This document shows, piece by piece, positions 12,195-46,349 of a stretch of DNA of 64,000 bases. Position numbers and translations under genes: made by a program. A model generated the notes under the pieces. It was not told the DNA's origin and made no database searches. It saw only the letters and a list, made by a program, of their open reading frames with translations. Each line of letters opens with the position of its first letter. Positions within the stretch are counted from its first letter, which is position 1. The DNA comes from Chlorokybus atmophyticus (taxonomy: Eukaryota > Plantae > Mesostigma and Chlorokybus algae): positions 418,652 to 482,651 of the forward strand of contig RHPI01002090.1 of NCBI GenBank assembly GCA_009103225.1. Reading direction: 5' to 3'.

Positions 12195-13544
12195 ATGTGT
12201 GGTTTTTGACTTGCTAGCTTCCCCCTGTAGATAAGTGCCATGCTGTTGCACTGGCCGCAACAGCCTTGGTGTGCGTACAATGCTGTGCAGTCGCTGGGAT
12301 CTGTACATACTGCAGCTTGCACAGCCTGCCATGGTGCTGTAGAACTGCGTAGCTTAGTCCATAATGTGTGTGTATGTTTCTTGTAATTGGTGATCCTTGC
12401 GCTGTGTATCAACACACCAGTTGCCTTTGTGCGACTGTGTCAATCTGTGCCCTATGTGCAGAATGCCCGCTGCCATGATGAAGCTGATGTAATTGGTCGA
12501 GCGCCGCGTGTGTCTACTGATGTGTTGAGACATGTGTGGGCCAGTTGACGTACTGTATGATATGACATCGCATGCAAACACACCATAATGCAGAAAACAT
12601 TGCAAAAGGTTACAATGAGAGACTTTCACCATTTCTCTCTATACGGAGTGCCACAAGTATGTCTGCTGCGCAAGTGGATGCTTGCGCCTGCCTGCCTGCC
12701 TACCATCCTACCTACTATATGCACTTGCCATGATCAGCGTAATTCTGGGATTATCTGGTGCAAGTCTACTGCGTAAGCGCTGGTCTGGGCCCCTTGAGTT
12801 TCTGTTGTTGTTATGCTATTGTGGTTTGTGATGGGCATGAGCATACATCCTTGCACTGCAGTATGTAGTGTGTCTCTCATCGCATGGGGTTCAATCCCAC
12901 TACAGTTTGAAGAGTTTTTGTAATTCTCAGTAGTGCGTGTGGGATACAACACCAGGTTGTGCCATGCACCTCCAAAGATGTCTAATCCGGCATACATGGG
13001 TGGCTGGCAAAACTGCCAAGACAACTGCGCGTTGCATGTAACAACTCTGATTCATGCAACACAATGGTGAATGTATAAAAGATGAAGTGCTGATAATGCG
13101 TGCGATGCTTGAGTGGTGTGCATGTTGCATGGTGTTGCGTGTGCACACAGCACGTCATATATCGCGTACACACAAACCAAACATGTGCAACACCTGTGCA
13201 TGCAGGTACACTACAATCCTATGCACAGGAGTACACGAAAGGCCAAGCTCGCTAATGTGCATCCATTCGGCTAATCAGCCGTAATGCGACAGATAACATT
13301 TTGGACAATCTGCGCAACAGCTACAGCTACAAGGGAGAGTGTTCAAAGTACAGTAGGGCAACCAGATCAAAAACATTGAAACACACTTGACCTCAACCAG
13401 CCTCTCCCAATGTTCGACGTTGCTGAAAGGTAGGAGGTCAAGTGTGGTTGCAACAAATCGTGGTCTCCAAAGAACCCAGAAAGAGAAAGATAATTCTCTC
13501 ATGGGGATCGTCCAGCTCCACGCAGCTATGTAACAGGAACCTCC

Positions 13545-16500
13545 TCACTTCGGTTTGTTCAGGAAACGCAGCGCCAAGTACCCAAATATGCGGAACAACA
13601 CAAACATGCCGCAGAGGATGGGCACCTCCAGTGCAACGCTGTCTTTGACATTGAAGTCTGGAATAGACAGCGAAGGATGATTCTCTATGAGACAGGGCGG
13701 GGTTCCACACTGATAGGTGTCAATACTCCCAAACTGCAACTTGAGCAGTATGCGGTAGCTGTAGTAGATGTAGCTGAGCCACTTGAGCCACTCCAACCAT
13801 GCAGGCACTTGTCGCACGTAAAAGCCTCCGACCAGCAACAGTGTTAGCGTAATTACCGACGATACAGTTGTCGCCTGCTTCACATCCTTGAAGGTCGCAC
13901 CCATCCACAGGCCAAAAGACTGCAAAAACACAGCTCAAAATCACTGCAAAGGAATGGCCACATAACGCACTGGTGGTATCCAGGCTGTGATAGCATCAAG
14001 AAACCAACGTCACTGTCGTACCACTGCCGTCATGACTGTTACAAGTATGGTCAGCAACATCCAGAGGAAATCCACTGAAGCTCGAAGTCCAACCATCCTG
14101 CAAGCGGAGGTTTTAGCTTATGCTGTGTGTGCATCCACTGAGTCAAGAAGTTCACAAGATGCGCCATGACAGCGCAAATATCGCAGTGCAAGGGACGCCG
14201 ATTACCAGTACGAGATGCAGATGAAAACAGTAGGCAGCAGCAACTCCATTGGAGCATCACTGAAAGACCTTCCAAGAAAATATGCGGACAAACGATACAT
14301 GCCACTGCCTCGCTCTTTCAATAGAATGGCCCGTTCCTGCAAACATTGATGACATACATCAAATGTTGGTTACACTGATGTTGTGCCCTGCAACAAGCAA
14401 CTACTCGAGTTTGCTCCCCAATGTGCTTACCTGAGGGAAAGTAAAAAGACTGTTGAAAAGCGGGAAGAATGACCTGTGACCAACATGTTGGTTATAAACT
14501 GCCATGTGCAAATGCCTATATGCAGACCTTTCATAAGCTAGTCCAAGAAAGAAACGCAACACAATGATAGGACCAGCATTTCAGAGCACAGGAACAGCCC
14601 AGGAACCCACCAGAAAACACAGAGGAAGAAAAGGTATCCTGCCAGATCGGAAATGCCTGCTTCAGTGCTAGCTCCGCGCCTCAACCACAGCAACCCTGTG
14701 ATAACAGCCACAGCAATGACCTAGCCACACACAGAAGGTCAGCTACAGCATGACCAAAGCAGCACGAGTCACACATCAGCAGCTTGCAGTACCTGGAAAA
14801 TCTTGAGCCCGCTGAAGGCATCAAAGCGCCGCTCTTTGGTTGCACGCTCAGCCAGCACACGGAACTGCGTCCACCATGCCACAGGCCATCTCTTCGGAGC
14901 CTGACCACAAGCACGTTGAAACATACCATATCACCAATGCGAAGATGTAATAAGTAACTGCTCCTTACCGCAACCTCCTCCTCCTTGCGATATATGGCAC
15001 GCATCCCTGAATTGGCTCGCTCAGGCTCGGCTAAATGCCGGGCTTTGGATGCAAAGCGGGATTCATAAGCTTGGATGAGGAACTCCTTGGACTCGAGGGC
15101 GCTGCGACCTTCTACTGCCTCGCCAGTGGCCAGGTCCAGCACGTAGTCCGCCGGGTTTGTCTCAAACTGGGGGCTGTAACCGAGGTTGGCAAAGTACTTC
15201 ATAGCATCCTTGCCCGCTCCATAGTACATGACATGACCCTGCACGCCATCCCGGGTTTCAGTTTTATTTTTAGGCAGCACTGCATATACACTCAATTAAT
15301 GCATGCTGCAATACACGCTTACGTCTGCAAGTAGGATCAACTTGTCAAACATCTGAAACATTCGGGACGAGGGCTGATGAATGGTTGTGATGATCGTGCG
15401 GCCGGAAGCCGCAAGGTTGCGCAGTGTGTGCAGGAGACGCAGTGCTGTTGTTGAGTCGAGCCCAGAGGTAGGCTCATCCAGAAACAACAAGGAAGGGTTC
15501 GTGACCAACTCGTGTCCCACATTGACACGCTTCCGTTCACCACCGGAGACACCACGCCTGAACGCTCCACCAATAATGGTGTCTGCTGCCCTGTAAGAAG
15601 AGAGAAACATGCTCAGGTTGACAGGTAGAGCACTTGCTGTGCATGCGAACGATGAGCTTTGCAGTATATGATGCTCCCATGACAAGCACCAACTCACTTC
15701 CGCAACCCCAAGGTATCGATGATGGCCTCGGCTCGCTCCTTTTTCATGGCGACGCTCACTGAATCGGGTAGCTTGAGCATGGCAGCGTATGTCAGTGTCT
15801 CACGCACAGTCAGGTTGGCAAAGAAGACATCGTCCTGCATGACAAAGCCCATACGCCGCCGCATGGCTTTGGCATACGTACGACCGTTGTACAGAATGTG
15901 GCCTTCAACATTATTCGTAATTCGGCCACCAAGCACGCTGAGTAAAGTGGTTTTACCAGAACCTGCAAACAACCAGCTTTGTTAATACGTCTTGCTTCGT
16001 AGCACTCAAGCCAGTCCAGCAGCAGACGCGATGTACCTGATGGACCCATTAGTGCAAGAAGGTCTCCAGGCATGACCAGGCCGGACATGTCGAACAGAAT
16101 CTGCTTCTTTGTTGCTGCTTGGGCCTCTTTGTCTTTCTGAAAGCGGCGAACGTCCCACCATGGCTGCTGGGTCAAGCCAATTTCGACCCAGTAGTTGATA
16201 GACTCAAACTGCGACAGCAGCGTGTTAATCACAATGTCACCACCAGTTGCAAGAAGATGCAATAGATGCAACAAAGCAACCTCACTTGCAACATGACAGG
16301 CAGCTCAGGCTGTTCATAAGGTTGAGCTGATATGTCCAAAGGCGTATCGTCTTCAGCGTCACCTGCGTGCGAACTACGTGCAAACGAACTCCTGCTGCGT
16401 GCAGGAGCGAGCGCTTCTGCATCCTTCACATCAACTCTGTGCTCGCGCGACTGTCGGGATTCGCGCCCAAAATCCTGGTCAGCCAACGCCAGCCCTGCAA

Positions 16501-18169
16501 ACCCTTCTCCATACCTGTGAAAGGCAAGTAAGGATTTTCCAATGAGCGAAAGGTAAAGTTTGAAGACCAAAATTTCGCAAAGTCTGATTGCAAACGGCAC
16601 CCACCATTGATGCGATGATGATGTCTTCACAACAGCAGTACTTTTCATCCGTACTGCATCTTTGCCATTGGAAATAATAGCCCCGAGTGGGGACAGTAAA
16701 TAACATAATTGAGTCACAGCACCAGTGCCATCACTTAGAGGAGACACAGATACCAAACACCGGAAGGCATCTCCATCCTGCGAAAATATCGAAAATATAT
16801 TCATCTTCTGAAGGCGCCAACGCGTACCAGCAATATCCTCACAGCCACTCACCTTGCGATGCAAATGCAATGTTACAGTCGTTTCAGATAAGGATGTTTC
16901 TGCCTTGTCCAGGTCGGTCACCGCTTCTGCCTCTGTGGCACTTCCCTGCATTGTTATCATCAGCTTTTAGACCAGAAGTAGTATTGTTTCTAGCTCCTAA
17001 CATGCTCTGAACATGCGCACACCCACTGAAGACAAGGTCAGTCAACAGTACCAGCAGCAAGTGGCTGGATTTCCCAATGGCTTCTCCCTCAGTGTAACCA
17101 GTAAGCATGACGAACGCTTGCGAGATCTGCACAATGGTGCGGCTGCGCACATCCAATATGAAGTATGCCCCATCTCCCTTGGCCAACACACGAAGCATGC
17201 GGTCTGCAGCGCAATCAAGTGTCAGATTCCTTGCTGCAGAGAAACACTGCTGCATTGGAACCTTGCTTGAACAGATGTACTACTTATACTCAAGCAAGCG
17301 ACGAATGCTGCATGCCATTGCCATTGTCAATGTGATGAAAAGTGGGTTACCTGCACTAGACTGGCGCCGAACCAGGCCTTCTGGTGCATGGTCTCCAGCA
17401 GGCGTTGCTGCAAGACGATCTGGTGGGTGTAAGTCACTGACTTGAACCAGCATCACAACAACAAGCCATTGAAGCGTGAACAACACTACTGACCACCATA
17501 CGCAATGCAAAGGCGAAATGCATGATAAGGAGTCTCAACGAGCACTTCAGGAAACCGATTGTGCTTTCACGACCTCGCAACAGGCACTAACAGCCATTGT
17601 CCCCAACTTCTGTGACGGGGAGAAGAAACAATGGCGCAATAAGGCCCACATGCACAACGCTTGCAGTAACGGGAGTGTCCAGTAGGAGCGTGACAGAATG
17701 TTTGTTGTTTGACATGACGGCCATGGGTAGAACAAAGGCTACGCCGACGTTGCTGGCCTCTAACAAACAGCAAATAGCACTGATAGCGAGCGCAACGCGC
17801 TGCATTTCTTGGCAGAAAACCAACAACCAATGCTAGGTATTGCTCGCACTGCAAGGCTGCGCAGAACTAATCTCAGCAAGCAGTGAGCGGCCAACCACGC
17901 GCGAGCACTGAACATGCGCATCACAGCTGCTCAACACAGCAACATTCCAGCTGCTAATGAGCTTCAACTTCGCATGCAGCACGTCAACAACAAGAGGGAT
18001 TGATCGCAAACAACCAGCAGCAGGGTGCTGTACGAGGCAGGCAGATCCCCACACGCACACATCCACCGTCCCTTTCCCCCGCCCCCAACTCAACATACAC
18101 TCGCGCACCTATGGCTTCCTGCGCAGCCTGCTGTACATTGTCAGGCAAACGACTGTTCCCGTCCTCCAT
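13545..18169 (-). CDS. ABCG (White-family, ABCG22/27-like) half-transporter with N-terminal PAS domain(s). The 5'-most exons are uncertain.
   Basis: Walker A GPSGSGKTT, signature [21 protein letters not shown]-loop TIHQP, TMD with [14 protein letters not shown] and a C-terminal ...ALRFLNKPK*. Upstream exons join in phase to a PAS domain (17203-16605). The start at 18169 is tentative. Confidence 0.9.
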
Positions 18170-21100
18170 GCCCGCCGCCCGTCCCGCCACCCGTACCGCC
18201 GCCGCCTTCGCCACCGCCGCCGCCGTGGCACTACCGCCTTCGTCCAGCTATTGCACTGTGTTGCGCCACGTTGGTGCCCTGACAAAGCCCAGTCATTAGC
18301 ACCAAGGCGGGTACATTTAACGTACATGTCCAGGACATGATGTCCCCCGCCCGTTGCATTCGGAATCCTGAACCTGTGGTTCAGTGCGTTCCAAGGAGTG
18401 CCACCTCACACTGCTGTTCGGTCGAATCAATTCAGGACTCAAGTCGCGGCGAATCGAGACGCGGAGCGTGGTGCTTGCACGCACCGTTGGCGTGCGCGTC
18501 ATCATTGCTGTACCAGCCTTGCTTGTCAGGGTCGAGGTTGTCAAGCATCTGATAGGCCAAGATGTAGGCAGAGTACGGCTCGTACTGTTCGGGCAAGAAG
18601 TGGTCATTGAGAGTTATGAGTACAAGTGTTGCCGAGCATATGTATGGCTTTGAATGGGGAGTAAAATCCTGTATGGTAAAGTCGTAGCTTTGGGCCACTC
18701 AATAAAATGATGAAAAGCCACACATCAGTTGCCAAACTTGTTGATTAGAGAATGGAGCAATAGCTTATAAGCTAAGCAACGCTAAGCAATGGACAAGTTG
18801 CACTTGATGAGAGTATTTGGCAATCACCTACATTGTATCACAAGCATAATTATGGATTATGGTCTCATCAAATATATAGCAGCTCACTCACAACTTGTGT
18901 GGACCTACCAACCCATCATGAACAACTTATACATACTAAAACAACTTGCGTTGACTTATCACCAATTTATTATAATGCTTAATGAATAGCATTAAAATCG
19001 TTTGTGTGTGTGTGATGTTGTTTGTAATGTGGTATTTATATGTGGGTGGAAAAAAAAATTATTATATTTAACAACGCGATAATTATAGCATCATTGTATT
19101 GTATGATATATTTGTCGTATGACCATTCTTCCTTACGACATGTGAATCCTTTTAAGCAAAAACCGTGCAGCACACAATCATGTGTATTTGTATTGTGTTA
19201 CAACAAGTAGAAATGATTACCTACATACGCATCTTAATTTAGGACGCCGATGAAGGGCAATATCTTTGTGTTAATTAAAAACAGTGTATACACTTTGCAT
19301 ATACATAAGCTTACACGTCAACTTCGTGACAACACACTTATATCACATGTTCAAGCTTGTGCACAAGCTTTAACGTAATCAAGCTTTTCAAAAACCTATA
19401 GCGTCTAACACAAAGGTCAACTTCACATTGTCATCCTTATATTGCATTAGATTTTTTGTCGTTCGTTGGCTAAGTGGTATAATATGTGAAAATGCTTCAC
19501 AACACTGTATTCACCTTCATGTCCCGCAGCATTTAACATTGTAACAAGCACATTATGAGCAATGCGATAATACGCACAGTTAGTCACATCCTGTAATGGT
19601 GAAGCAAAGATGAGCGACATATCAGGGTGCGCGGGGCAATAATTACATGCTGTTACAAGTCGTATGCAAATCATCATAAGCAAAAGTATATTGGAATGCG
19701 CATTGTTGCAATATTTGTCATTCATTGCACACCGTGAGCTGTTACGTGCGACTGACACACAACTTAACACACATACATTTACATCTTGTACATCTATACC
19801 TTGTACACAATACATTTGATGCAGTCATATCATAGCAAGCCATTATTGTCACAGAATTATGGTCAATTTGTGGTAATTTAATGTACCTTCCCGTTACAAT
19901 TATGATACATGCAGAACAAGAGGCGGTGATATGCAGTTGCCAGCTTTATCCAAGTTGACCACTTGGCTGTATAGCAATTTGTAAAGCTGAAACCCGGAGG
20001 GCACATGCAACGGCACTTAGCTTGCCTTTGTAATGCGTGTCACACCACCAAACCATGTCTTCTTACCTGCGACATGCATGTACATTCTCTCGCATCAACC
20101 ATGGCTGCAAGTTAATAGACAATAACCGTTTATGAGGATAATATCATAGATATTGCTCTGTAAGTGTTTTGCTGAGCTTTTACACCTGGAGCCAACATAG
20201 TGGCATTTACCATACTGTAGGGCATCTTCTACAACCACATACAACAATGCATGTAAATTGTCGTGATCTCGATACTGCCACGGTGGTGTTACCAGCCCAC
20301 CGAAACCCATTACATGTTAGTATCGTGATAGACGCGACGTGTGTGCCGTTTTAGCCGTCTACATTTAAGGGTGTATTAGCTGCTTTGTTTGGACATGATA
20401 TTGCCTTGTGCAAAACTCCTCATTACGTTTACAACATGCCACCCTCCCTCTGGCTGCAGGTTGTACACCTACCCCTCATGTCTCCTTGCCTGCACCCACT
20501 GCCGCATATGCACGCACACGCATACACGTAGTGTAGTGGTGGGTTGGTTACGTAAGTTTAACACCTACACCCCCCGGCCAAATATGTAAGAATTACCTTA
20601 CTTTCTATGCATAGCTTATTGGACAGTGCCTGATGCTATTTCATGTTTGCATCATTTGATATAACGTGTGCCATTAAGCAACAATTGTGGCCAAGTACTA
20701 TGCATCGCACATGCTTCATGCAAATTACACTCTGCTAAAATTGCGCAACTGTCAACGGCAACGTACAGTGACATGATTGCAACTTGTAGTGCTTATCTGC
20801 TATAGTGCTTATCTGCTATACATACAGAGATGCGGTTTAATGCTGTCGACTGACTCTTTACATGCTGCGGGGTGCACGCATATCGGCAACGGACTTCTAC
20901 AGACAGGTGGCGGAGGAGGCGACCACAGAAACAAGCAAAACAGCTCTCTGTACCACACTGATTGGCCCGCCTTGTCGCCTGCAAGCACCCTCTCACCTGG
21001 ACAGGCGAACAGCAAGCAACCTGACGACCGACATTTGCGCATACTGCAGGCACGTCAAGCTACGGCCAGCAGGCTGGCGCAGCAATGCCTACCACTTCAC

Positions 21101-21405: not shown

Positions 21406-23739
21406 ATGTGGCGGCATGTGACGCCACATGGGGTGCAGGTGGCGGCTGCGGCTGCTGCCGGGGCGAGGGCGTTGCTGAAGGTGAAACAGCGGACAAGATG
21501 TTGCAAAGCAGCCTGCAGCTCGTCTGCTGCGGGAGCACTGCGCCGCCCGCAGTTGGCCAAACTAGGCAAAGCTGGGTCGCCTGGTTTCAGCGCAGCTTTA
21601 CGGAGACGGCAGCCTGCCCGTTATCCTGCATGTAGCCGTGAGCGCTGTCGTGCGAGCATGGCGACGGCTGCTGCCGGCGGTGAGGACGCTAGAAGTTTGC
21701 ACAATGCCCGGCAGAGCAAGTACTTTGACGCGGCTGTGGAGTACTTCACACAACCCATCCCTCAAGAGGTGACTTGGTGTTTCCATTGATGTATGTGGAG
21801 CATGCTCCACACACAGTTTGCATGCGAAGCGGAACTATGTCATGTGTGGTTAAGTGGAGCAGTGCTTGGCACGCATATATGCTTGTTTAGTAGGTACAGA
21901 TGCTGCGAGTAACCTCAGCCGCTGGAGCGCTGATGGGATGTGCAGGTCGTTGATAGGCTGCACCAGATTGTGGGAGCTGCAAAGTTGACACAATCAGCGC
22001 GTGTCTTGGATGTCGGTTCGGGTGTCGGGCCTCTCATCCCTATTATAGGTAGGACAGCAATTGCAGTGTTGTTAGTTGCGGTGTCCGCACTTTTCGATTC
22101 CTGTCAGACCCTTCAAGGTTTCTCTTCCCCCCAAACCCACGCAGCTGTTTGGCAGGTGCCCCAGACTGCTGCACAGGCACCTGGCAAACAGCTGCCGATA
22201 GGGGCTGCAGCAAAGCAAGTGCATGCAGCATGTTTACAGCGCAATAGCAAACATGCCATGCGGTTGCAGAGGCAGCAGGCGTGCCGCAAGACCAGATTGT
22301 TGCCGTGGATTTGTCGGAGGCAATGTTGGTAGAAAATAAAACTCTTCATGACGATGTGTCCTGCTGGATTGGTGATGTCGCGGACCTGCCAAAAGAGTAT
22401 GGTCCCTTTGATGCGGTGTTCATAAACGCCTGCTTTGGCAACTTTTATGACCAAGCGGCTGCGCTCGCTGATATTGTCTCACTCTGCAACCCAGGTGCAA
22501 ACAGCCGTGAATAGTGGAACCATCATGCATGCTGGCGTTGTCTGTGTTTGTGTTAAGCCGTGACGTTGACCAGGTGCTGCTATTGTTATAAGCCACCCGC
22601 TGGGTCATAGGTACGTGGAGCAACTTCATCAGGAATCGCCAGATCTTGTTCCCAACAGTTTGCCGCATAGCAATGCACTTGACGAGTTGGCTACGCCGTT
22701 GGGACTGCAAGTGGAATCACTAACTGATGAAGAGGACTTGTACCTGGCTCTTTTGCGGGTGCGTAATGGCACTGTAAGCTCAGCTGTGTTTTGCTCTGTC
22801 AAGCTAATGCATCAATGTTGGGACAGATAGGTTAATGCGGATCATGTACCGGACCATCGACTTGGCAGCTCGGAGTTGCAACCATCTCAGATCGATGATT
22901 TGAGCAATCCCTCTGCAGAGCTAGCAGGTTGCAAAACTCTTGCGTTGCAGCACTTGTAATCAGGTACTGAAGAGAGTCTGACTGCTCTTCTTTCTTTGTT
23001 GCAACAGGTGCATTGTACCTAGACAAGGCTCCTGTTTACCTGCGAGGTCCCGTGGTCAGTGGCTTCGGCCGTGGTAGCAAGCAGATGGGCATACCAACAG
23101 GTGCTTTGTTGCTGCAGTGCCCGAACATTTTCCAAGTCTACTCTGGTTTGATACAATGCAAGCACTAAAATGCGCTAACTGCGTTCGTAGCTAATCTACC
23201 ACCGGAGCAGCTGCAAGAGGAATTGGAGGGCATTCAACTGGGGGTGTATTTTGGGTGGGCTGCCCTAGCAGAAGGGAATGACCAACCTCACAAGATGGTA
23301 ATGAACGTGGGCAAGCGACCAACATTTGTGGACGGGGAGGGCATCACGGTGGTAAGCGTTGTTGTACACATACAGCCATGATGCTTGCGCTGTCACACCC
23401 AGATGTGCGAAGCATCAGGTCCATTGGCCATGATTGACATCAAGGTCTTGTAGGAACTTCACATCATGCACAAATACCCCTCAGACTTCTATGGCAAGGA
23501 GCTTCGTGCCGTCGTCCTCGGCTTTGTGCGCGGGGAGCAGAAGTTTTCTTCAATAGGTATGAGCAGCTCATGCACTTCATTTGCATGCAAGCAACGCGCA
23601 TGCAGATGACCTCGCCAACTCTTGGGCAGGTGAACTCATCGCGCGCATCCACAAGGACATAGAAGTCGCAGATGCAGCTCTTGATCGACCCATGTGGTCA
23701 GTGTACCACCAGGATCCGTTCTTCTACCAAAAAACTTGA
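21406..23739 (+). CDS. Transit peptide + class I SAM methyltransferase + riboflavin kinase (flavokinase) fusion, 9 exons
   Basis: MTase motifs: VLDVGSGVG, VAVDLSEAM, FDAVFINACF, ISHPLG. Linker exon 22831-22927 is open and phase-matched. RFK motifs: [53 protein letters not shown], then IHKDIEVA...*. Confidence 0.86.
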
Positions 23740-30990: not shown

Positions 30991-33894
30991 GTCCAAGCCT
31001 AATGCAAAAACAACTAATGCAGAAACTGTATGCGAGGCGCTCCAGCTAAACCCACTGCAGCACAGGCTGCTTGTCGCCTGACCCCAGCTGTCACCTGCTG
31101 CTGGCAGTAACCTCAGCAGTCATGGCGGCGAAGCGGCCGATGGATCACACAGCCGCTCATGCACTGCCTCGTTCAGCAGGATGCCACTCTCCGGCACGCT
31201 ATTGCAGCCAAGCAGGAGCGAGACGTCCACACCTCAGCAGCACACCCAAGGACACGCCTCGGCCACAAAAACCAAACTCTAGCAGCGTGCAATGCAAAGC
31301 TTCCTATAGCAACGCCACCTCTAAAGCTGAAAGCTTCCCCTCCTTCACAGACACAAGCAACGACAGCAATCGCAATGGCAAAGACAGAGACGGCGGAGGC
31401 GGCAGAGGTGGTATGCAACTACTGGTTCAGCATGAGCATGGCGCTGTTTGCTGCAGCACACACAGGCGCACGCATCCCGACCGGTTCTTGACCGGCACAC
31501 CGGCGGCCTATCGCCTGACATGTTGGCAATGGTTTGTATAACGTCTGCAGCAGTGACCGGTGGAGCGGCCGCTCGTGCGCAGGCCAGCTGGAGGACCAGC
31601 GGGGCTCGTGGCAGGGTGGGGATCGAGAGTGGTCCCGCGACGGCACTCACTCCACCGGGACATACGGATTCATCGCTATAATGCAGTCCTGGGAGAAATA
31701 CAATAAGGGTCCTAGGATCAGAAAGCGGTCGCCTGTGTAGCAGAGCCAATGGCTTGTACTCTCTGGATGCTTTTGCAGAACTTCGCGGCGACAGCGGGGT
31801 CCTCGTGGCATTTCGCGCGTTTCCGAACCGCCGTGATTTGAGTTTCGACTTTCCCGCCACGGCTAGGTCCATGTGTCGATTTGAGTCAATCGTTAGACAG
31901 ATTTTCGACGGTGCACATTGGAATAGTAACGGCTGACAGCCTGACAACATCTGACTCGAATATCCTCACCCACCCGGTTTTACGACTGACGCCTCATGAG
32001 AGCTGCATGTACCTGACTACAGGTTGTAGTCTACAATAGCTCGATTATTAATTGACATTCTGATAATCTTCCTGCTTGCAGCGATTGCCAACACTATAAA
32101 ACCCACCTTAGGAAACTGTAAAATGTATTATTAGTTTTGCATGTCGTATCACACCATATTGCCATGGACATCATGTAACAGTCTTTCGCATTCAATCGGG
32201 ATACTTTATACTGTTGAAACACGTTTGTTGAAGGAGTTAAGGCCATGCACCATACAACCAGTACATATAATACAATCAGGGTTACATTAAGTAATGAAAA
32301 TATAGTGATTTTTAATTGTTCATGAGGTATCCCGCATGTCGACCGTTGTAAATGACGTGCAATTGCTTCTTGCGTGGTAATAAACTTGCAAACTTGTTGG
32401 ACATAAGTAAGCACAATGCCACGGTTGCATTACTTACACACAAGCTCAAAGGAAGTTGCTGTGCAAAAATAGTTGTAAGGGGTTGCACAAGAAGCACACA
32501 GAAGCATACAGGTGCGTTCAGACGATGACACGTGCATATACCACTGGTGCTTTAAGGTGTACTCTGCAAGCGTGCGTACTTAAGATGGCACTGTCACTGG
32601 CAGTATTATCACTCCAATCACCGGTCATAGCATCTTCATCGCTTATACACAGCAAGAAAGTCAGCAGCGTGACAGCATGCAGACACATCAATAAACATTG
32701 GTCATATATAAGGAAAAAATGGTGTAATAATCTATGTTCCTTTAGCTGGAGTCCAAAGGGTATACAACTGCGTCATACATTTCAAGAAAGCATCCGCTTT
32801 GGCGTACCCATGTTGTCACATTGTGTCAATGTATAAACATTGCAACGCGATTGATGCATTGATGTATATTGCATAACATTAAACTCTTATAGTCAATAAA
32901 CGTGCATAAAACAAAAATTACAATGGTATATCATCGCTGCTTAAAATGCCTTTGATTGGTTGACACCAAATCAATAGCCTACAATTATTATACAATAATG
33001 CATCACATGCATGGATACGAGCTTTGTAATGTTCAAGCAGTGCTCGAGTGCTTACTTATGTGTACATACATACATTGTAAATAAACCCCGCCTATTTCAG
33101 AGATGGATGATTGCCTTGCAATCTGTATGTGGGTTATACATAAGATGTGCATCAAATGCTTGATGCAAAGTATGAGGTTTCAAATTGTACATCATACACG
33201 CTTTTCAGTAACACTACAAAGTCATATATGCTAAATGTTGTTTTTTTATCGCAATTGCGAATTCATAATGTAATAATCTAAACACAAGTCTTGAGCACAA
33301 ATGTTAACTTGGCGAGCGCATATCTGGCTACACAAGTATAAAGCATGTATATATGCTTTATGTATTGATACATCATAAAATTGGTCATGCAAATATCGCA
33401 ACACGAACCACAAGCATTAGTAATGTCTATTGTTTTTTTGTTACCAATTATCCAATACAGAAGTCAACAACTCTTACGCCAACATGCTTTGCAAACAATC
33501 ATGGTATAGGCACAGAGGACATTGCCACATGGAATGGATTGATGGGAGGCTTATGATTGTGCACTTCAGACAAGATAAATAAAGCGCGTGTAATCCAAGT
33601 ACGAGTCAATTTCACTTATAACTCGATGCTTGCATGATGTGCCGCACCACATTGCACAAAGAGGCGACACTTACCCGCAGCATGCCTTTGCGAAATGTGT
33701 AATCAGTCTCGCATCCAATAACAAGCCTCATGATGGTATGATGCCACTATGATGTTTATCATGACATAATAAGCACATGCCACACGTACGGCGTTTGTTA
33801 CCATGTGCTGCACAGCAAGCAGACACAAACACTGCTAAATGCATTACTCTCCAGCAAACACTATGTACAACATAACTAGGGCAGAACCAATGAC

Positions 33895-35181
33895 TTACAG
33901 CTGATTCCTGACACGCCGAGTGTCTTCTTTGAGCCGGCCAGCGCCAAAGTCCACATTGGTCTCCAAGTTGTCAATCATAGTCTCTTGGTGCTTGAGCTCC
34001 TCACCCATGTCGGTCGCAACCCTCTTCATCTGCCTTAGCATGTCGCTGATCTTGTCCAGATCCTGGTCCTGCTCCTTGACATACTGCTTGATGGCGCCCA
34101 TGTCATCCTGTTCCTCACCCGCCAGGACCGCTTCACTGGTGGATGTCGTCTTCTTGCCATCAAGCCCGAGCTGCTTGCGCTTCTCTTTCAAATCGGCATC
34201 ATTCTGCGCTGCCTTGCTAGACCTGTTCGACATCTCCTTGAGCTTGCCACGCTTGACCTGCAGTAAGCAGAACAGCAACACATGAACTGACCAATGTATC
34301 TCTTTCAGAAAGTACGCTGCATGTTTATTAGAAGACTGACAGCAATGGCTGCAGGCAGTTGTCGCATACAAGCATACCTTTTTCTCGCCAGCAAATAGCC
34401 TTCCAAAAAAGTTCAGTTTCCGAATGGTAGTCTCACTAGTATTGAGAGTGGAATGCATGTTGTTCACCTGCCTGACAACCATGGGACATCACTCAGCAAC
34501 TGCGACAAGGAAAAACGGATGACATTGGCGCGCGACATAGCGCACGCGCATGCAAATGTGCATAAACTGATGGAACTTCAAGCAAGCCAAGGAGGCATGT
34601 ACAGAAGTTGTCAGACCACTGCTGCCAAACAAACCTGTGTATGTCCTCCATTTGCGCAGTTTGCCGCTGCAAGTTGACCTGCGTATCGGTTCCAATCCGC
34701 AGGGTGTCCTCTGCAATTTTAACGCTGCGCTTTGTGCCCTCCCGACCCTCCTTAGCATGGTGCCTCGCCATGCCCAAAAGCTCAGCCGTAATGGGGTCAT
34801 CCTATAAAACAAGCAGCAAGACTGTTGACAAAATTGTTTATCGACGACACAATGCCTCATGGCCAGCAGGTATATTGCTGTTCAATAAGTGCAGGTTTCA
34901 TACTGCAGGCATCACCGCACTGGTTGGCTTGCCAGCATGCAGTTGCTAGCTAACAGTGATAACCATGACGAGACTACTCAGCTTCAGCATGGGATCTGTA
35001 TTGGGTAATCAACGGACAGGCTATGTAGCAGGCCATGTGCGAGTATGCAGACCTCATGCATGCCCACCTGCTGGACGGCGCCGCCGCGGGCTATCTGCGC
35101 CTGAACCTGGGCGGCAGCAGCTCTGGCTTCCGCAGGCACCTCCTTGAAGAGCTCTTCGCGGGCGGCCACATGTCGAGACAT
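33895..35181 (-). CDS. SNAP25-family Qbc-SNARE
   Basis: Starts MSRHVAAREELF. First SNARE helix (...IAEDTLRIGTDTQVNLQRQTAQMEDIHRQVNNMHSTLNTSE) and second SNARE helix (EQDQDLDKISDMLRQMKRVATDMGEELKHQETMIDNL...RRVRNQL*). No TM segment. Confidence 0.88.
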
Positions 35182-35426: not shown

Positions 35427-36420
35427 ATGGCGTTGCTGCGGGCGGTGCGGGGCTTGCTGCTCGGCCGCGGCGCGGCGCTTGTCGCTCCTCGGAACACGCC
35501 GCTGGTGCGTGTGTGGTTGTCAGACATGCTTGCATGCGGACTGTGACAGTGATCCTGCTTCAGCTGGCTTGGCCTGGCTTGCTCAGTGGCTGGAAACACG
35601 TTGGTCAAGCATTCGGTGTGTGTCTGCTGTTAATCCTAGAACTGCGGTAGTTAGAGCACACACAGCAACATGCATATGTGCGTGGCAATCCGCAGGTCGC
35701 TAGGCTGTGTAGCACGCAGAGCAGCAGCAGCACCACCAGCACCAGCAGCAATGGCATTGATGGTGCAGAGGCAGTCCGTCAGCAGGTCGACGACATCAAC
35801 GAGCGCTTTGGGGAGGCGAGGGAGGAGATCGAGATGGCGATGGAAAGCAAGGAGACCGTCTATTTCAACGAAGAGGCGGAGATAGCCCACGAGGCAGTAC
35901 AAGGCGTGCTGTCCCGGTGAGGACACCAAACTCTGTGTCTCGTTTGAGTCAAATTGCTCCTTGTAAGCCAGCACTACTCGTTGGACGTGTCCATCAGTGC
36001 AGAGGCATGACTTTGCTGGCGCTCTTCACTGATCCAACGTTGTGCCTGGTTGCATGTGAGACATGCACTTTACCTGTGCATTATTGCTGTGTTGATGCTT
36101 GATACTGTTTCGTCTCTGCATACAACCATGCAGGCCGCGTGCATGTGATCACCACAAATTGATGTGATATCAAGCATGCTACCTCACGTCTATTGTGCTG
36201 TGCATTGAGTGTCATGCAACGCACGCAGCTCGCATGCCTGACATGCGATGTTTGCCCAAGACTGCAGGGTAGTGCTGATGCTATGAAGCGATGCGTGTGC
36301 AGGTATGAGAAGCTGCTCGTGAGTGTTGGCGAAAGTCAAAGGGGTCAGTTGGAAAGAGCCATGGGGCTGAAGATGGAGCAGCTCAAGGCTGAGCTTGCAC
36401 AGCTCCAAGAACATGACTAA
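35427..36420 (+). CDS. Small conserved, probably mitochondrial helical protein (plant 'embryogenesis-like' family)
   Basis: Presequence-like MALLRAVRGLLLGRG. Conserved core VDDINERFGEAREEIEMAMESKETVYFNEEA...ERAMGLKMEQLKAEL, recalled from plant homologues. Three phase-consistent exons. Confidence 0.85.
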
Positions 36421-37109
36421 CGCATGATCTCCATGCAGGAACTGCTGTTTAGCAGCACAGTTGAAAATGCTCCAGTGCACACCTGCACTTACACCTGGCC
36501 CAGCACAGGCTTGTACAACAACTTTACTGGAGAGGCTACATCACATTGCACAGTTGAAACTAACATTCTCATTTATGAGCTTCAGGGCGATCACGTGCCA
36601 ACCATGCAGATGACATGTGATATGATCCATGTTGCCCATTTTTTTTTAACAGCACATGCGCATGAAATCGCTCAAGCCCAGTGCCGTTGGTTTCCAATCT
36701 ACTTATACTACAGACTATTCAACCACAGACTAAGCCATTCACTTCGTGGTTGTTATATGTACTTCTTCTTTGCGCAGCATATTTGTGTGTTGGCCAGTTA
36801 TTGGGAAATGTTATGTTATGTAAACAATGTTTCTTTATTACATTACTGTGTATTGCAACCTACGTAGTGTGTCATATTGCACTGATCATGTTTAAATGTA
36901 GCTATCATATAATAAAGAATTATCAATATGTGTGCGCAATAAATCGTATTGCGAAAAGAGTGATTGTTACAGTGTATTTGCACATGTTTTCATTGCGTCT
37001 ATATCGCAATGCTACAATGTGCAGTAGTCATCAAGTGACCAATCGCAATACACAAATGGTTGTTAATATGCATTGCTTTGCGGTGCTTATAAGTCATTGG
37101 TTATGCTTA

Positions 37110-37397
<288 letters not shown>

Positions 37398-38184
37398 NTA
37401 CCCATACAGCAATACGCGAGCATAATGTACAATATATCATTACCATAAATACCAGCACGTTAGATGATTATATATGCATAAGCATACTATTACATATGTA
37501 ATTTTTATAATATGTGATACATCAATACCATGATCAACAGCACGTTAAATAATTACATATGCATAAGCGTGATGTTGCATATGTCATGCACAATGCATCC
37601 ACGCTTATGGTGATAAGTTATTCATACAGGATGTTATATAAAGATTGATTGATAAGCTGCGCAACTGGATTGCATGTTGAGTGTCATGTCCATATCTTAT
37701 TGAACTATGCAACACTTTATAGGAATTGCACTTAAACATTGACATGCATCAGGCAGTGTTTCTCCGTGCCTTAGGAAGGCCAAACATTGCATCATTGTTC
37801 ATTTGAGAAGTTCATTCCACATGACAACAGACAATACATGATTGAGGGATGCTAATATACCCAAACAGCCCCCACTGTGAACATACCGAACTTTCTATCG
37901 CACGTGCATTTGCTCTTTCTTGGGGATTCAAGCATCAATCTGATCTGGGATCCTAGGTGGCACAGCCTTTAAGGTGGCATGGCTTACGTGGCAGCGGCGC
38001 CCGCGTTGTCCGCCCGACAACATGCTTCACCCCAACCACCTCCGTGACTGCCCCGCCGAGCATGGCGCGCCTACCCGCGTGCTGCTCAGCAATGCTGCAG
38101 CAGCCTGCAGTGCAGTGACAGGCGCGGCTAGCGAGCACTGTGGCCTTCCGTTGAGCGCAGTCCACTACAGTCCACAGCAGCACC

Positions 38185-45600: not shown

Positions 45601-46349
45601 TCCTACGTTTCCCTTTTCGAAGGGTGCATGTTATTGGCTCGAGAGTCTAATTGTAAACCTGCTTCAGTGTGCCATTGCTCCCCTAAAACAACATCCACCC
45701 CGGGGATACTAATATCCACCACGATGAAGGCTGGTCGGGTTTTATGGCCATTAATAACAAAACGCCCTTTTACCTCTCCCATTGCATTGAGAGTGGAACC
45801 AGCAGCACGTACATATGACGTGACTGGTGTGAAAGGAATGTTATTACGTTTCACCCAAGCATGTTCAACAAAGTTATGGTTTGCACCAGTATTCATCAAT
45901 GCTGTACATGGTGTACCCATAAGTTGACTCTCAAATCTCCATTTGAGTGGCACTGAGTGACCATCAAATGTAGCTAATGTCGGAGTGCCGTGATTGGTAG
46001 TAGACTTGATAAAGATCACTTGCAACGGTGAAGCTCCTGTATCTTTGCGTGAGAGTTGCATGATTACTTCTCCCCCTTTCAACAATCGCGACCATGGGCC
46101 ATGATATCGAGGGATAACTACACATGCAGTGACAGCATGTTGTAATTGCAACTCGTGTAAGTGTTTAACAGCAGTTACAAATTGAGAGAATGGAACATTA
46201 ATCAAAACACAACCGTTTGTATTTCTCAACACAGGTGGTGTGCTCATATCAGTACATACATCTGATACATCACAAAGAGAGGAAACTTTATCAAGAAGTA
46301 CAGAGTTTTTAAAGTCGTTCTGCTCGACTAAGCTACCAACCACGGACAA
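42616..46349 (-). pseudogene. pol: Gypsy pol (protease, RT, RNase H, integrase, chromodomain) with frameshifts
   Basis: [15 protein letters not shown] and VYLDD; RNase H SDAS...EQELLG; integrase HHCC and DLIT...FHPQTDGQTE; chromodomain YEVEAIL...YLVKWKGY...NSWEP. Frame breaks near 45610, 44900 and 44480. Protease motif reads MNTGA instead of DTGA. Confidence 0.95.

What the first reader, a model, noticed from the sequence alone, without database searches (positions are those of the whole stretch)
16037..17203. LOV-shaped PAS domain spliced in frame to an ABCG transporter: a candidate sensor-gated exporter
Seen: exons 17203-17052, 16945-16853, 16777-16605, 16514-16286 and 16208-16037 join by GT-AG introns with matching phases and no stops. 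They give [97 protein letters not shown], then a linker, then [13 protein letters not shown] and the Walker A motif. The PAS segment follows the LOV template (AFxxLTGY..EE.LG...GxxT...KxG..F....P..D..G). The GRNCRFLQ motif reads GKSSHLLL, and the flavin-contacting Asn/Gln positions are also replaced. Established: plant half-size ABCGs normally carry only a disordered N-terminus, and I know of no PAS-ABCG architecture. Inference: a ligand- or partner-regulated ABCG exporter, probably not a Cys-adduct photoreceptor.
Basis: partly seen in the sequence, partly recalled or inferred. Interest (0 to 1): 0.85.

Follow-up and report, generated by a model that had tools for sequence, protein, structure and literature searches.

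The report
Flavin-blind LOV domain on ABCG transporter
This Chlorokybus gene really does encode an ABC exporter with an N-terminal light-sensor-type (LOV) domain that has lost every flavin-binding residue, while its Mesostigma ortholog keeps an intact LOV, which points to an old, uncharacterised family of probably light-regulated transporters.

Summary
The five exons join exactly as described. They belong to one 16-exon gene on the minus strand (ATG 18169, last codon ends 13548) that encodes an 860-aa protein. Spliced transcript contigs from two independent studies cross every junction, including the PAS-to-ABCG junctions. The protein is identical to the Chlorokybus atmophyticus catalogue model Chrsp26S04180.

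- **Architecture:** PAS (aa 38-152, Pfam PAS_9 above threshold, AlphaFold pLDDT about 95), then a roughly 87-residue disordered linker, then a complete ABCG half-transporter with all ATPase motifs intact.
- **Closest solved relatives:** LOV domains, by both sequence and fold.
- **Flavin contacts:** all eight FMN-contacting positions are replaced (S85 S86 H87 L90 D103 L118 C128 L149).
- **New here:** the Mesostigma viride ortholog (43% identity, colinear over 847 aa, sister in the ABCG-only tree) has a canonical LOV with all eight residues.

The Chlorokybus domain is therefore a degenerate LOV inherited from an ancestral LOV-ABCG. It evolves about 3 times faster than its Mesostigma counterpart. 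It most likely acts as a light-independent regulatory or dimerisation module, but that step is inference. A 2025 preprint lists a "LOV-ABC transporter G-25" found in silico, and nothing of this kind has been characterised. I rate it a new variant of a known kind, of moderate to high interest.

The parts
13239..18300 (-). Whole transcription unit of the PAS(LOV-derived)-ABCG gene. It has 16 exons. The 5' end is approximate; the 3' end is where the transcript contigs end.
   Evidence: Spliced contigs X1 rec1 and X2 rec3; exon table with GT-AG introns.
13548..18169 (-). Coding sequence for the 860-aa protein (ATG at 18169; stop codon 13547-13545).
   Evidence: identical to P0001.
16685..17357 (-). 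A'alpha helix plus PAS core (aa 38-152), encoded by the end of exon 2 and by exons 3, 4 and 5.
   Evidence: Pfam PAS_9 36.8 bits and PAS 27.7 bits; AlphaFold pLDDT about 95 with PAS topology; Foldseek and phmmer best hits are LOV domains.
16943..17075 (-). Degenerate flavin motif GKSSHLLLG (aa 83-91, split by intron 3) in place of GRNCRFLQG. It includes Ser86 where the adduct-forming Cys would be.
   Evidence: Alignments with canonical LOVs.
16325..16675 (-). Disordered Ala/Ser/Asp/Arg-rich linker, aa 156-242 (end of exon 5 and exon 6).
   Evidence: pLDDT 25-37 in the full-length model; composition.
15209..16291 (-). Nucleotide-binding domain, about aa 254-500 (exons 6-10). Motifs present: Walker A GPSGSGKT (aa 310-317, spanning intron 7), Q-loop, signature VSGGERKR, Walker B, D-loop and H-loop.
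   Evidence: Pfam ABC_tran 96.8 bits; motif scan.
13557..14876 (-). ABC-2 type transmembrane domain, about aa 589-857 (exons 11-16), with six hydrophobic helices.
   Evidence: Pfam ABC2_membrane 157 bits; hydropathy; helices in the AlphaFold model.
17408..18108 (-). Intron 1 (701 nt), much longer than the other introns (68-147 nt).
   Evidence: Joint 17407/18109 in X2. An unspliced low-depth X1 contig lies inside it at 17494-18044.

Best explanation
The locus is a single expressed gene of the streptophyte alga Chlorokybus atmophyticus. It encodes a half-size ABCG (WBC-type) ATP-driven exporter. A roughly 87-residue disordered linker tethers the N-terminus of the transporter to a well-folded PAS domain that descends from a LOV blue-light sensor. 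The ancestral protein, still represented by the Mesostigma viride ortholog, carried a canonical flavin-binding LOV and so was probably a light-regulated ABCG transporter. In the Chlorokybus lineage all eight flavin-contacting residues, including the photoactive cysteine, were replaced, so the domain can no longer work as a flavin photoreceptor. Inference from here on: the retained fold most likely acts as a light-independent regulatory or dimerisation module. ABCG half-transporters work as dimers, so two such domains sit next to the two NBDs. They could dock on the NBDs or pair with each other and bias NBD closure, much as the cofactor-less PAS of KCNH channels regulates gating. The domain would be frozen in one signalling state or would respond to a partner protein. 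Fusion, descent and loss of the flavin site are shown. The regulatory role is inferred.
For: - One mRNA: spliced contigs from two studies cross all 15 junctions, and the model equals the catalogue protein P0001.
- Domains: PAS_9, ABC_tran and ABC2_membrane all score above their Pfam cut-offs. ATPase motifs are intact and there are six TM segments.
- Fold: the AlphaFold PAS core has pLDDT about 95, the linker 156-242 has pLDDT 25-37, and the ABCG part is high. Best Foldseek hits are LOV domains with target-normalised TM 0.75-0.92. Sequence-only PDB search puts aureochrome-like LOV first at E=4e-10, followed by other LOVs and hERG/EAG PAS.
- Descent: Mesostigma P0373/P0273 is colinear at 43% identity over 847 aa and has PAS_9 at 73 bits plus the ABCG domains. 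On a tree of the ABCG part alone the two are sisters (SH-aLRT 99), outside all other streptophyte ABCG9/14/21/22-type proteins. On a PAS-only tree the Chlorokybus domain is sister to the Mesostigma LOV (94/84).
- Loss of the flavin site: 0 of 8 FMN-contact residues are kept in Chlorokybus against 8 of 8 in Mesostigma.
- Shifted constraint: the PAS branch is 2.35 against 0.71 substitutions per site, while the ABCG branch is shorter in Chlorokybus (0.97 against 1.41).
Against: - No experiment or comparative rate test shows that the Chlorokybus PAS is still under purifying selection. Its long branch is also what a decaying domain would show.
- The sister grouping in the PAS tree is not strongly supported (94/84, and the long branch was flagged by the tool).
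- The AlphaFold alignment consisted largely of LOV/PAS sequences, which favours a LOV-like model.
- A roughly 87-residue disordered tether argues against rigid helical coupling, so any regulation must work by docking or dimerisation, for which I have no direct evidence.
- The Mesostigma fusion rests on two annotated gene models. I could not fetch its DNA or transcripts.
Confidence: 0.7

Rival explanations
1. Sensor-gated exporter. The former flavin pocket, now lined by Ser, Ser, His, Leu, Leu, Cys and Leu, binds a different small and probably hydrophobic ligand, perhaps the substrate or a metabolite. Ligand occupancy gates ATPase activity and export.
For: The PAS fold is kept with high model confidence. 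The polar flavin contacts are replaced mostly by hydrophobic or small residues rather than by random ones. PAS domains commonly bind small ligands (general knowledge).
Against: No ligand-specific motif was found. The replaced residues could equally fill the cavity, as in cofactor-less hERG PAS, which is among the closest solved relatives. The domain has a 3.3-fold longer branch than its Mesostigma counterpart, and the ancestral state was flavin binding. I could not inspect the model coordinates for a cavity.
Confidence: 0.15
2. Evolutionary relic. After light sensing was lost, the domain has no function and persists only because deleting it is not selected for.
For: All cofactor residues are lost. 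The PAS branch is accelerated while the ABCG part is not. PAS identity to Mesostigma (36%) is not far above that of the disordered linker (29%), compared with 58% for the NBD.
Against: The reading frame is intact across three exons and is abundantly transcribed. The score is still above the Pfam threshold and the fold is predicted with confidence (pLDDT about 95). Fold-determining motifs shared with LOVs are retained. A neutral segment of this age would be expected to lose recognisable similarity, although the date of the loss is unknown.
Confidence: 0.12
3. Still a photoreceptor. The domain binds flavin or another chromophore in a non-canonical way and signals without the cysteine, as engineered Cys-less LOVs can do through flavin photoreduction.
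For: Cys-less LOV signalling is documented (the abstract of PMC5645311, listed, says so). The overall LOV scaffold is kept.
Against: More than the Cys is lost: both phosphate-binding Arg residues, both Asn residues and both Gln residues that hold the isoalloxazine ring are also replaced. Cys-less signalling still needs bound flavin.
Confidence: 0.03
4. Artefact: two neighbouring genes (a small PAS protein and an ordinary ABCG) merged by reading through.
For: None found.
Against: Single contigs in two independent transcript assemblies span PAS and ABCG exons with all introns removed. The same architecture is annotated in Mesostigma.
Confidence: 0.01

Closest known systems
Mesostigma viride Mv12476 (jgi/Mesvir1 8171/8172; P0273 764 aa, P0373 1040 aa): LOV-ABCG
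   Same: Colinear ortholog with an N-terminal LOV/PAS, a linker of about 90 residues, an NBD and an ABC-2 TMD. Identity is 43% over 847 aa. It is sister on the ABCG-only tree.
   Different: Mesostigma keeps GRNCRFMQG and all eight FMN contacts, whereas Chlorokybus keeps none. The Mesostigma long isoform has about 170 extra N-terminal residues. It is uncharacterised, and I found no paper describing it.
'LOV-ABC transporter G-25' in the preprint 10.1101/2025.06.20.660589 (13 algal modular LOV proteins, in silico)
   Same: A LOV sensor fused to an ABCG-type transporter in an alga.
   Different: That protein has the canonical N C R R Q N N Q set (its Table S1). Organism and accession are given only in an image table, so I could not tell whether it is the Mesostigma protein. 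No experiment is reported, and the degenerate Chlorokybus form is not mentioned.
KCNH (hERG/EAG) potassium channel N-terminal PAS ('eag') domain
   Same: A cofactor-less, LOV-like PAS at the N-terminus of a membrane transport protein. It is among the closest solved relatives by sequence (E about 4e-7) and by fold. From general knowledge, it regulates gating by intramolecular docking, which is the working analogy for the mechanism proposed here.
   Different: It belongs to an ion channel, not an ATP-driven pump, and has an unrelated effector and lineage. It is an analogy of mechanism only, not membership.
Canonical LOV photoreceptor domains (phototropin LOV1/2, aureochrome, VVD, EL222, YtvA)
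   Same: Same fold, colinear alignment with a single 2-residue deletion, and shared scaffold motifs.
   Different: The adduct-forming Cys and the Asn/Gln/Arg flavin contacts are all absent. No J-alpha-type helix follows the core.
Land-plant half-size ABCG9/14/21/22 clade
   Same: The transporter part is 45-51% identical and has the same Pfam domains and motifs.
   Different: Among the proteins listed in the two searches (120 each), none other than this protein and Mesostigma P0273 carries a PAS family in the precomputed Pfam column. Substrates of the plant members (from my knowledge: cytokinin, ABA-related compounds, lipids and sterol derivatives) cannot be transferred to the alga.

Membership tests
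ABCG (WBC) half-size ABC transporter | Reverse topology: one NBD N-terminal to one ABC-2 type TMD. | tested here: met
   ABC_tran at aa 295-443, then ABC2_membrane at aa 591-799; AlphaFold model.
ABCG (WBC) half-size ABC transporter | Intact catalytic motifs: Walker A, Q-loop, signature, Walker B, D-loop and H-loop. | tested here: met
   [33 protein letters not shown] and TIHQP are all present.
ABCG (WBC) half-size ABC transporter | Six transmembrane helices. | tested here: met
   Six hydropathy peaks; long helices across aa 589-857.
ABCG (WBC) half-size ABC transporter | ATP-driven export of a substrate. | not testable with these tools
   Needs ATPase and transport assays.
PAS fold | Score above the curated threshold of a PAS family model. 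| tested here: met
   PAS_9 scores 36.8 bits (cut-off 27) and PAS 27.7 bits (cut-off 22.6) on the full protein. Exon 3 alone was below threshold.
PAS fold | Five-stranded antiparallel sheet flanked by helices. | tested here: met
   The predicted model has strands at 52-57, 62-66, 112-119, 125-136 and 142-151 plus four helices, with pLDDT about 95. This is a prediction, not a solved structure.
LOV domain (flavin photoreceptor) | Homology to LOV domains. | tested here: met
   The best PDB sequence and fold hits are LOVs. The ortholog carries a canonical LOV and is sister on the domain tree.
LOV domain (flavin photoreceptor) | GXNCRFLQ motif with the adduct-forming cysteine. | tested here: not met
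   The motif reads GKSSHLLL, with Ser86 at the Cys position.
LOV domain (flavin photoreceptor) | Conserved FMN-contacting Asn, Gln and Arg residues (CrLOV1 N56, R58, Q61, R74, N89, N99, Q120). | tested here: not met
   These positions are S85, H87, L90, D103, L118, C128 and L149.
LOV domain (flavin photoreceptor) | Bound flavin and a blue-light photocycle. | not testable with these tools
   Needs a spectrum of the purified domain.

The most novel reading that the evidence does not exclude
The earliest-diverging streptophyte algae carry a natural light-gated primary active transporter (LOV-ABCG, intact in Mesostigma). Chlorokybus would then hold a naturally 'blinded' version whose former flavin pocket has been re-tuned to sense a different signal, either a small ligand or a partner protein, that gates export. 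The pair would form a natural before-and-after experiment in sensor-effector rewiring on an ABC pump.
Probability: 0.15. Interest if true: 0.85.

Novelty: new variant of a known kind. Interest (0 to 1): 0.62.

Why it matters
As far as I could find, no ABC transporter with a covalently attached PAS or LOV sensor has been characterised.

- **A candidate natural light-regulated pump.** The Mesostigma/Chlorokybus pair shows the architecture is old, predating the split of these two lineages, and that it is maintained. The Mesostigma protein is of interest for photobiology and optogenetics.
- **A natural flavin-less comparison partner.** The Chlorokybus protein has the same architecture without the flavin site. 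It can show what a LOV scaffold does once photochemistry is gone, and how an N-terminal sensor on a long flexible tether can talk to an ABCG NBD dimer.
- **A question about streptophyte evolution.** The ABCG part is sister to the land-plant clade that includes the hormone and lipid exporters ABCG9/14/21/22. This raises the question of whether sensor control of this clade was lost on the way to land plants.

Tried and rejected
- **Pfam on single exons.** Only exon 3 gave sub-threshold PAS hits. The domain is split over three exons, so this was uninformative until the full-length P0001 was recovered.
- **HMMER scan of 1.84 billion representatives with exon 3.** It returned the protein itself plus multi-PAS proteins whose scores sum several PAS stretches, and no second PAS-ABCG. 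It was useful mainly for obtaining the P0001 id.
- **Word-index search of the PAS+linker region.** It found only the protein itself and two unrelated multi-domain PAS proteins (one named as bacterial). The orthologous LOV shares too few exact 5-mers.
- **Full-length search.** It listed only PAS-less ABCGs. The Mesostigma ortholog surfaced only when canonical LOV cores were added to the query profile.
- **ESM Atlas look-alike searches.** Nothing useful came back.
- **The look-up of encoding contigs for the Mesostigma protein.** Nothing is on record, so intron positions and its transcripts could not be compared.
- **Degenerate DNA pattern for a PAS peptide in JGI metagenomes.** There were no matches, so I had no second Chlorokybus-like sequence for a dN/dS test.
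- **Glantz et al. 2016 LOV census.** The paper is not held, so I could not check whether LOV-ABC was catalogued there.
- **Literature searches.** The only hit for PAS/LOV plus ABCG was the 2025 preprint.
- **Rejected readings.** The merged-genes artefact is refuted. A functional Cys-adduct LOV is rejected.
- **Tool notes.** Both read laying and the look-up of sequencing runs are now at their caps.
Full report
**1. Observation**

Reading the minus strand and joining the five stated exons gives a single stop-free frame.

Public runs holding this stretch were found in two studies. Laying their contigs on window 12900-18700 showed one 2807-nt contig (X1) and one 2907-nt contig (X2), identical to the genome. 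Each skips every intron from 13919/14022 up to 17203/17351. X2 also skips a 701-nt intron between 17407 and 18109. All skipped segments end CT..AC on the plus strand, which is GT..AG on the minus strand. These records are therefore spliced RNA, and the PAS and ABCG exons sit on one assembled transcript in two independent data sets.

The complete model has 16 exons and an ATG at 18169 preceded by an in-frame stop. The last codon ends at 13548, and the protein has 860 residues.

A HMMER scan with exon 3 returned an 860-aa database protein, P0001, that is identical to my spliced model. Its source name is Chlorokybus atmophyticus jgi/Chlat1/3897/Chrsp26S04180. The gene model therefore already exists in a public catalogue. 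I found no paper that discusses it.

**2. What it is**

- **Pfam on the full protein.** PAS_9 scores 36.8 bits (cut-off 27, aa 52-143) and PAS scores 27.7 bits. ABC_tran (aa 295-443), ABC2_membrane_7 and ABC2_membrane (aa 591-799) are also present. This is an N-terminal PAS on a reverse-topology half-size ABCG.
- **ATPase motifs and membrane helices.** Walker A, Q-loop, signature VSGGERKR, Walker B, D-loop and H-loop are all intact, and six hydrophobic helices are present.
- **AlphaFold, PAS segment alone (49-sequence alignment).** The model shows an A'alpha helix followed by the five-strand, four-helix PAS topology. Core pLDDT is about 95, and the chain is disordered after about aa 154.
- **AlphaFold, full-length.** It gives the same PAS (pLDDT 93-96), a linker at aa 156-242 with pLDDT 25-37, and a confident ABCG body. 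No J-alpha-like helix follows the core.

**3. LOV ancestry**

- A sequence-only search of the PDB with aa 36-160 gave 117 hits. Aureochrome-like LOV came first (E=4e-10), followed by other LOVs (CagFbFP-type, EL222, phototropin LOV1) and the cofactor-less hERG/EAG PAS.
- Foldseek ranks LOV domains first, with target-normalised TM 0.75-0.92 and rmsd 1.1-2.7 Å for most of the top hits.
- The domain aligns with canonical LOVs without gaps apart from one 2-residue deletion.
- At the eight classical FMN-contact positions (CrLOV1 N56, C57, R58, Q61, R74, N89, N99, Q120, numbering from my knowledge of the LOV1 structure), the Chlorokybus protein has S85, S86, H87, L90, D103, L118, C128 and L149. The preprint's Table S1 lists almost the same set.

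**4. The ortholog**

Ordinary searches found only PAS-less ABCGs, the closest being land-plant ABCG9/14/21/22-type proteins at 45-49% identity.

A profile that combined P0001 aa 1-560, three ABCG N-termini and six canonical LOV cores (A3) brought up P0273, Mesostigma viride Mv12476-RA.1. Among the 120 proteins listed in that search, it was the only one besides P0001 with PAS families next to the ABCG families. Its cluster also holds a 1040-aa isoform, P0373, with a complete TMD.

- P0001 and P0373 are colinear from aa 43 to aa 858 at 43% identity.
- By region, identity is 36% for PAS, 29% for the linker, 58% for the NBD and 47% for the TMD.
- The Mesostigma domain scores 73 bits on PAS_9. It has GRNCRFMQG and all eight canonical flavin contacts.

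Two trees address descent.

- **ABCG part only, 34 proteins.** Chlorokybus and Mesostigma are sisters (SH-aLRT 99) and lie outside all other streptophyte members. From my knowledge, this matches the accepted species tree.
- **PAS domains only, 49 domains.** The Chlorokybus domain is sister to the Mesostigma LOV (ultrafast bootstrap 94, SH-aLRT 84, not starred). Its terminal branch is 2.35 against 0.71, although its ABCG branch is the shorter of the two (0.97 against 1.41).

The simplest history is an ancestral LOV-ABCG in the common ancestor of the two algae. Loss of the flavin site and faster evolution of the domain then followed in the Chlorokybus lineage. No second, canonical LOV-ABCG from Chlorokybus appeared among the listed hits.

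**5. How it probably works**

Shown here:
- One polypeptide carries both parts.
- The PAS is folded and LOV-derived, and it has no flavin-binding residues.
- A long disordered tether joins it to a catalytically competent ABCG half-transporter.

Inferred:
- ABCG half-transporters function as dimers, so two PAS domains are held near the NBD pair.
- With a flexible tether of about 87 residues and no J-alpha, coupling cannot go through a rigid helix.
- The plausible modes are PAS-PAS pairing, or docking of the PAS sheet or A'alpha helix on the NBDs. Either would bias NBD closure and hence ATPase and export activity. The KCNH eag domain is the nearest functional analogy.
- In Mesostigma the same geometry with an intact LOV would make this light-dependent.
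- In Chlorokybus the module would be locked in one state or controlled by something else.

I give about 0.7 to the package of real fusion, LOV descent, flavin blindness and a retained non-photochemical role. Within that package the regulatory role is the weakest step. The rivals are a new small-ligand sensor (0.15), a functionless relic (0.12), a non-canonical photoreceptor (0.03) and an artefact (0.01).

The substrate cannot be inferred. The land-plant relatives transport diverse compounds.

**6. Comparison with what is known**

LOV sensors fused to many effectors are well known. One preprint (10.1101/2025.06.20.660589) lists a 'LOV-ABC transporter G-25' with canonical residues among 13 algal fusions found in silico. 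It reports no experiments, and the organism is given only in an image.

No paper was found on PAS- or LOV-ABCG in Chlorokybus or Mesostigma, or on any characterised PAS-ABC transporter. The Glantz et al. 2016 LOV census could not be read.

I did not test it, but it suggests that LOV degeneration may be recurrent in this alga.

**7. Verdict**

It is right on architecture and on 'not a Cys-adduct photoreceptor'. It is too strong on uniqueness, and the ligand gating is untested.
- **Membership.** The protein is a member of the ABCG half-transporters and of the PAS fold. It is a LOV descendant that fails the defining functional features of LOV photoreceptors.
- **Novelty.** New variant of a known kind.
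- **Interest.** About 0.6. It comes mainly from the evolutionary pair (intact LOV-ABCG in Mesostigma, blind version in Chlorokybus), which makes a natural sensor-controlled ABC pump directly testable.

Noticed in passing
window 17494-18044 (inside intron 1 of this gene): A separate low-depth (10.8) unspliced 551-nt contig of run X1 lies wholly within the 701-nt first intron. The main X1 contig does not show the exon 1-exon 2 joint. This could be intron retention or an alternative transcription start. The next in-frame ATG (Met42, exon 3) would still precede the PAS core.
   Followed up: no
window 16778-16852 and 16515-16604: Introns 4 (75 nt) and 5 (90 nt) are multiples of three and stop-free in the coding frame, so 16966-16232 reads as one 245-aa open frame. 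Retaining either intron would insert residues into or just after the PAS domain rather than truncate the protein.
   Followed up: no
window 21406-23739: Another first-stage note (s1-186497) reports a methyltransferase-riboflavin kinase fusion gene about 3-4 kb from this LOV-derived gene. Riboflavin kinase makes FMN, the LOV cofactor. This is probably coincidence and I did not examine it.
   Followed up: no
window 32001-34000 and 36001-38000: Two AT-rich stretches (GC 0.40 and 0.36) stand out against about 0.50-0.55 elsewhere. I did not examine them. Other notes place retroelement sequences (a chromovirus) near 46005-46330.
   Followed up: no
P0273 / P0373 (Mesostigma viride Mv12476, not in the window): Two annotated isoforms exist. 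The 764-aa model is truncated in the TMD (ABC2_membrane positions 2-146 of 211). The 1040-aa model has a complete TMD and about 170 extra N-terminal residues before the LOV.
   Followed up: partly
P0013, P0023, P0144 (hits): Very large proteins (1286-4197 aa) carry 4 to 7 tandem canonical LOV domains each (GRNCRFLQG repeated), as seen when scanning hits for the LOV motif. Their origin is unknown to me.
   Followed up: no
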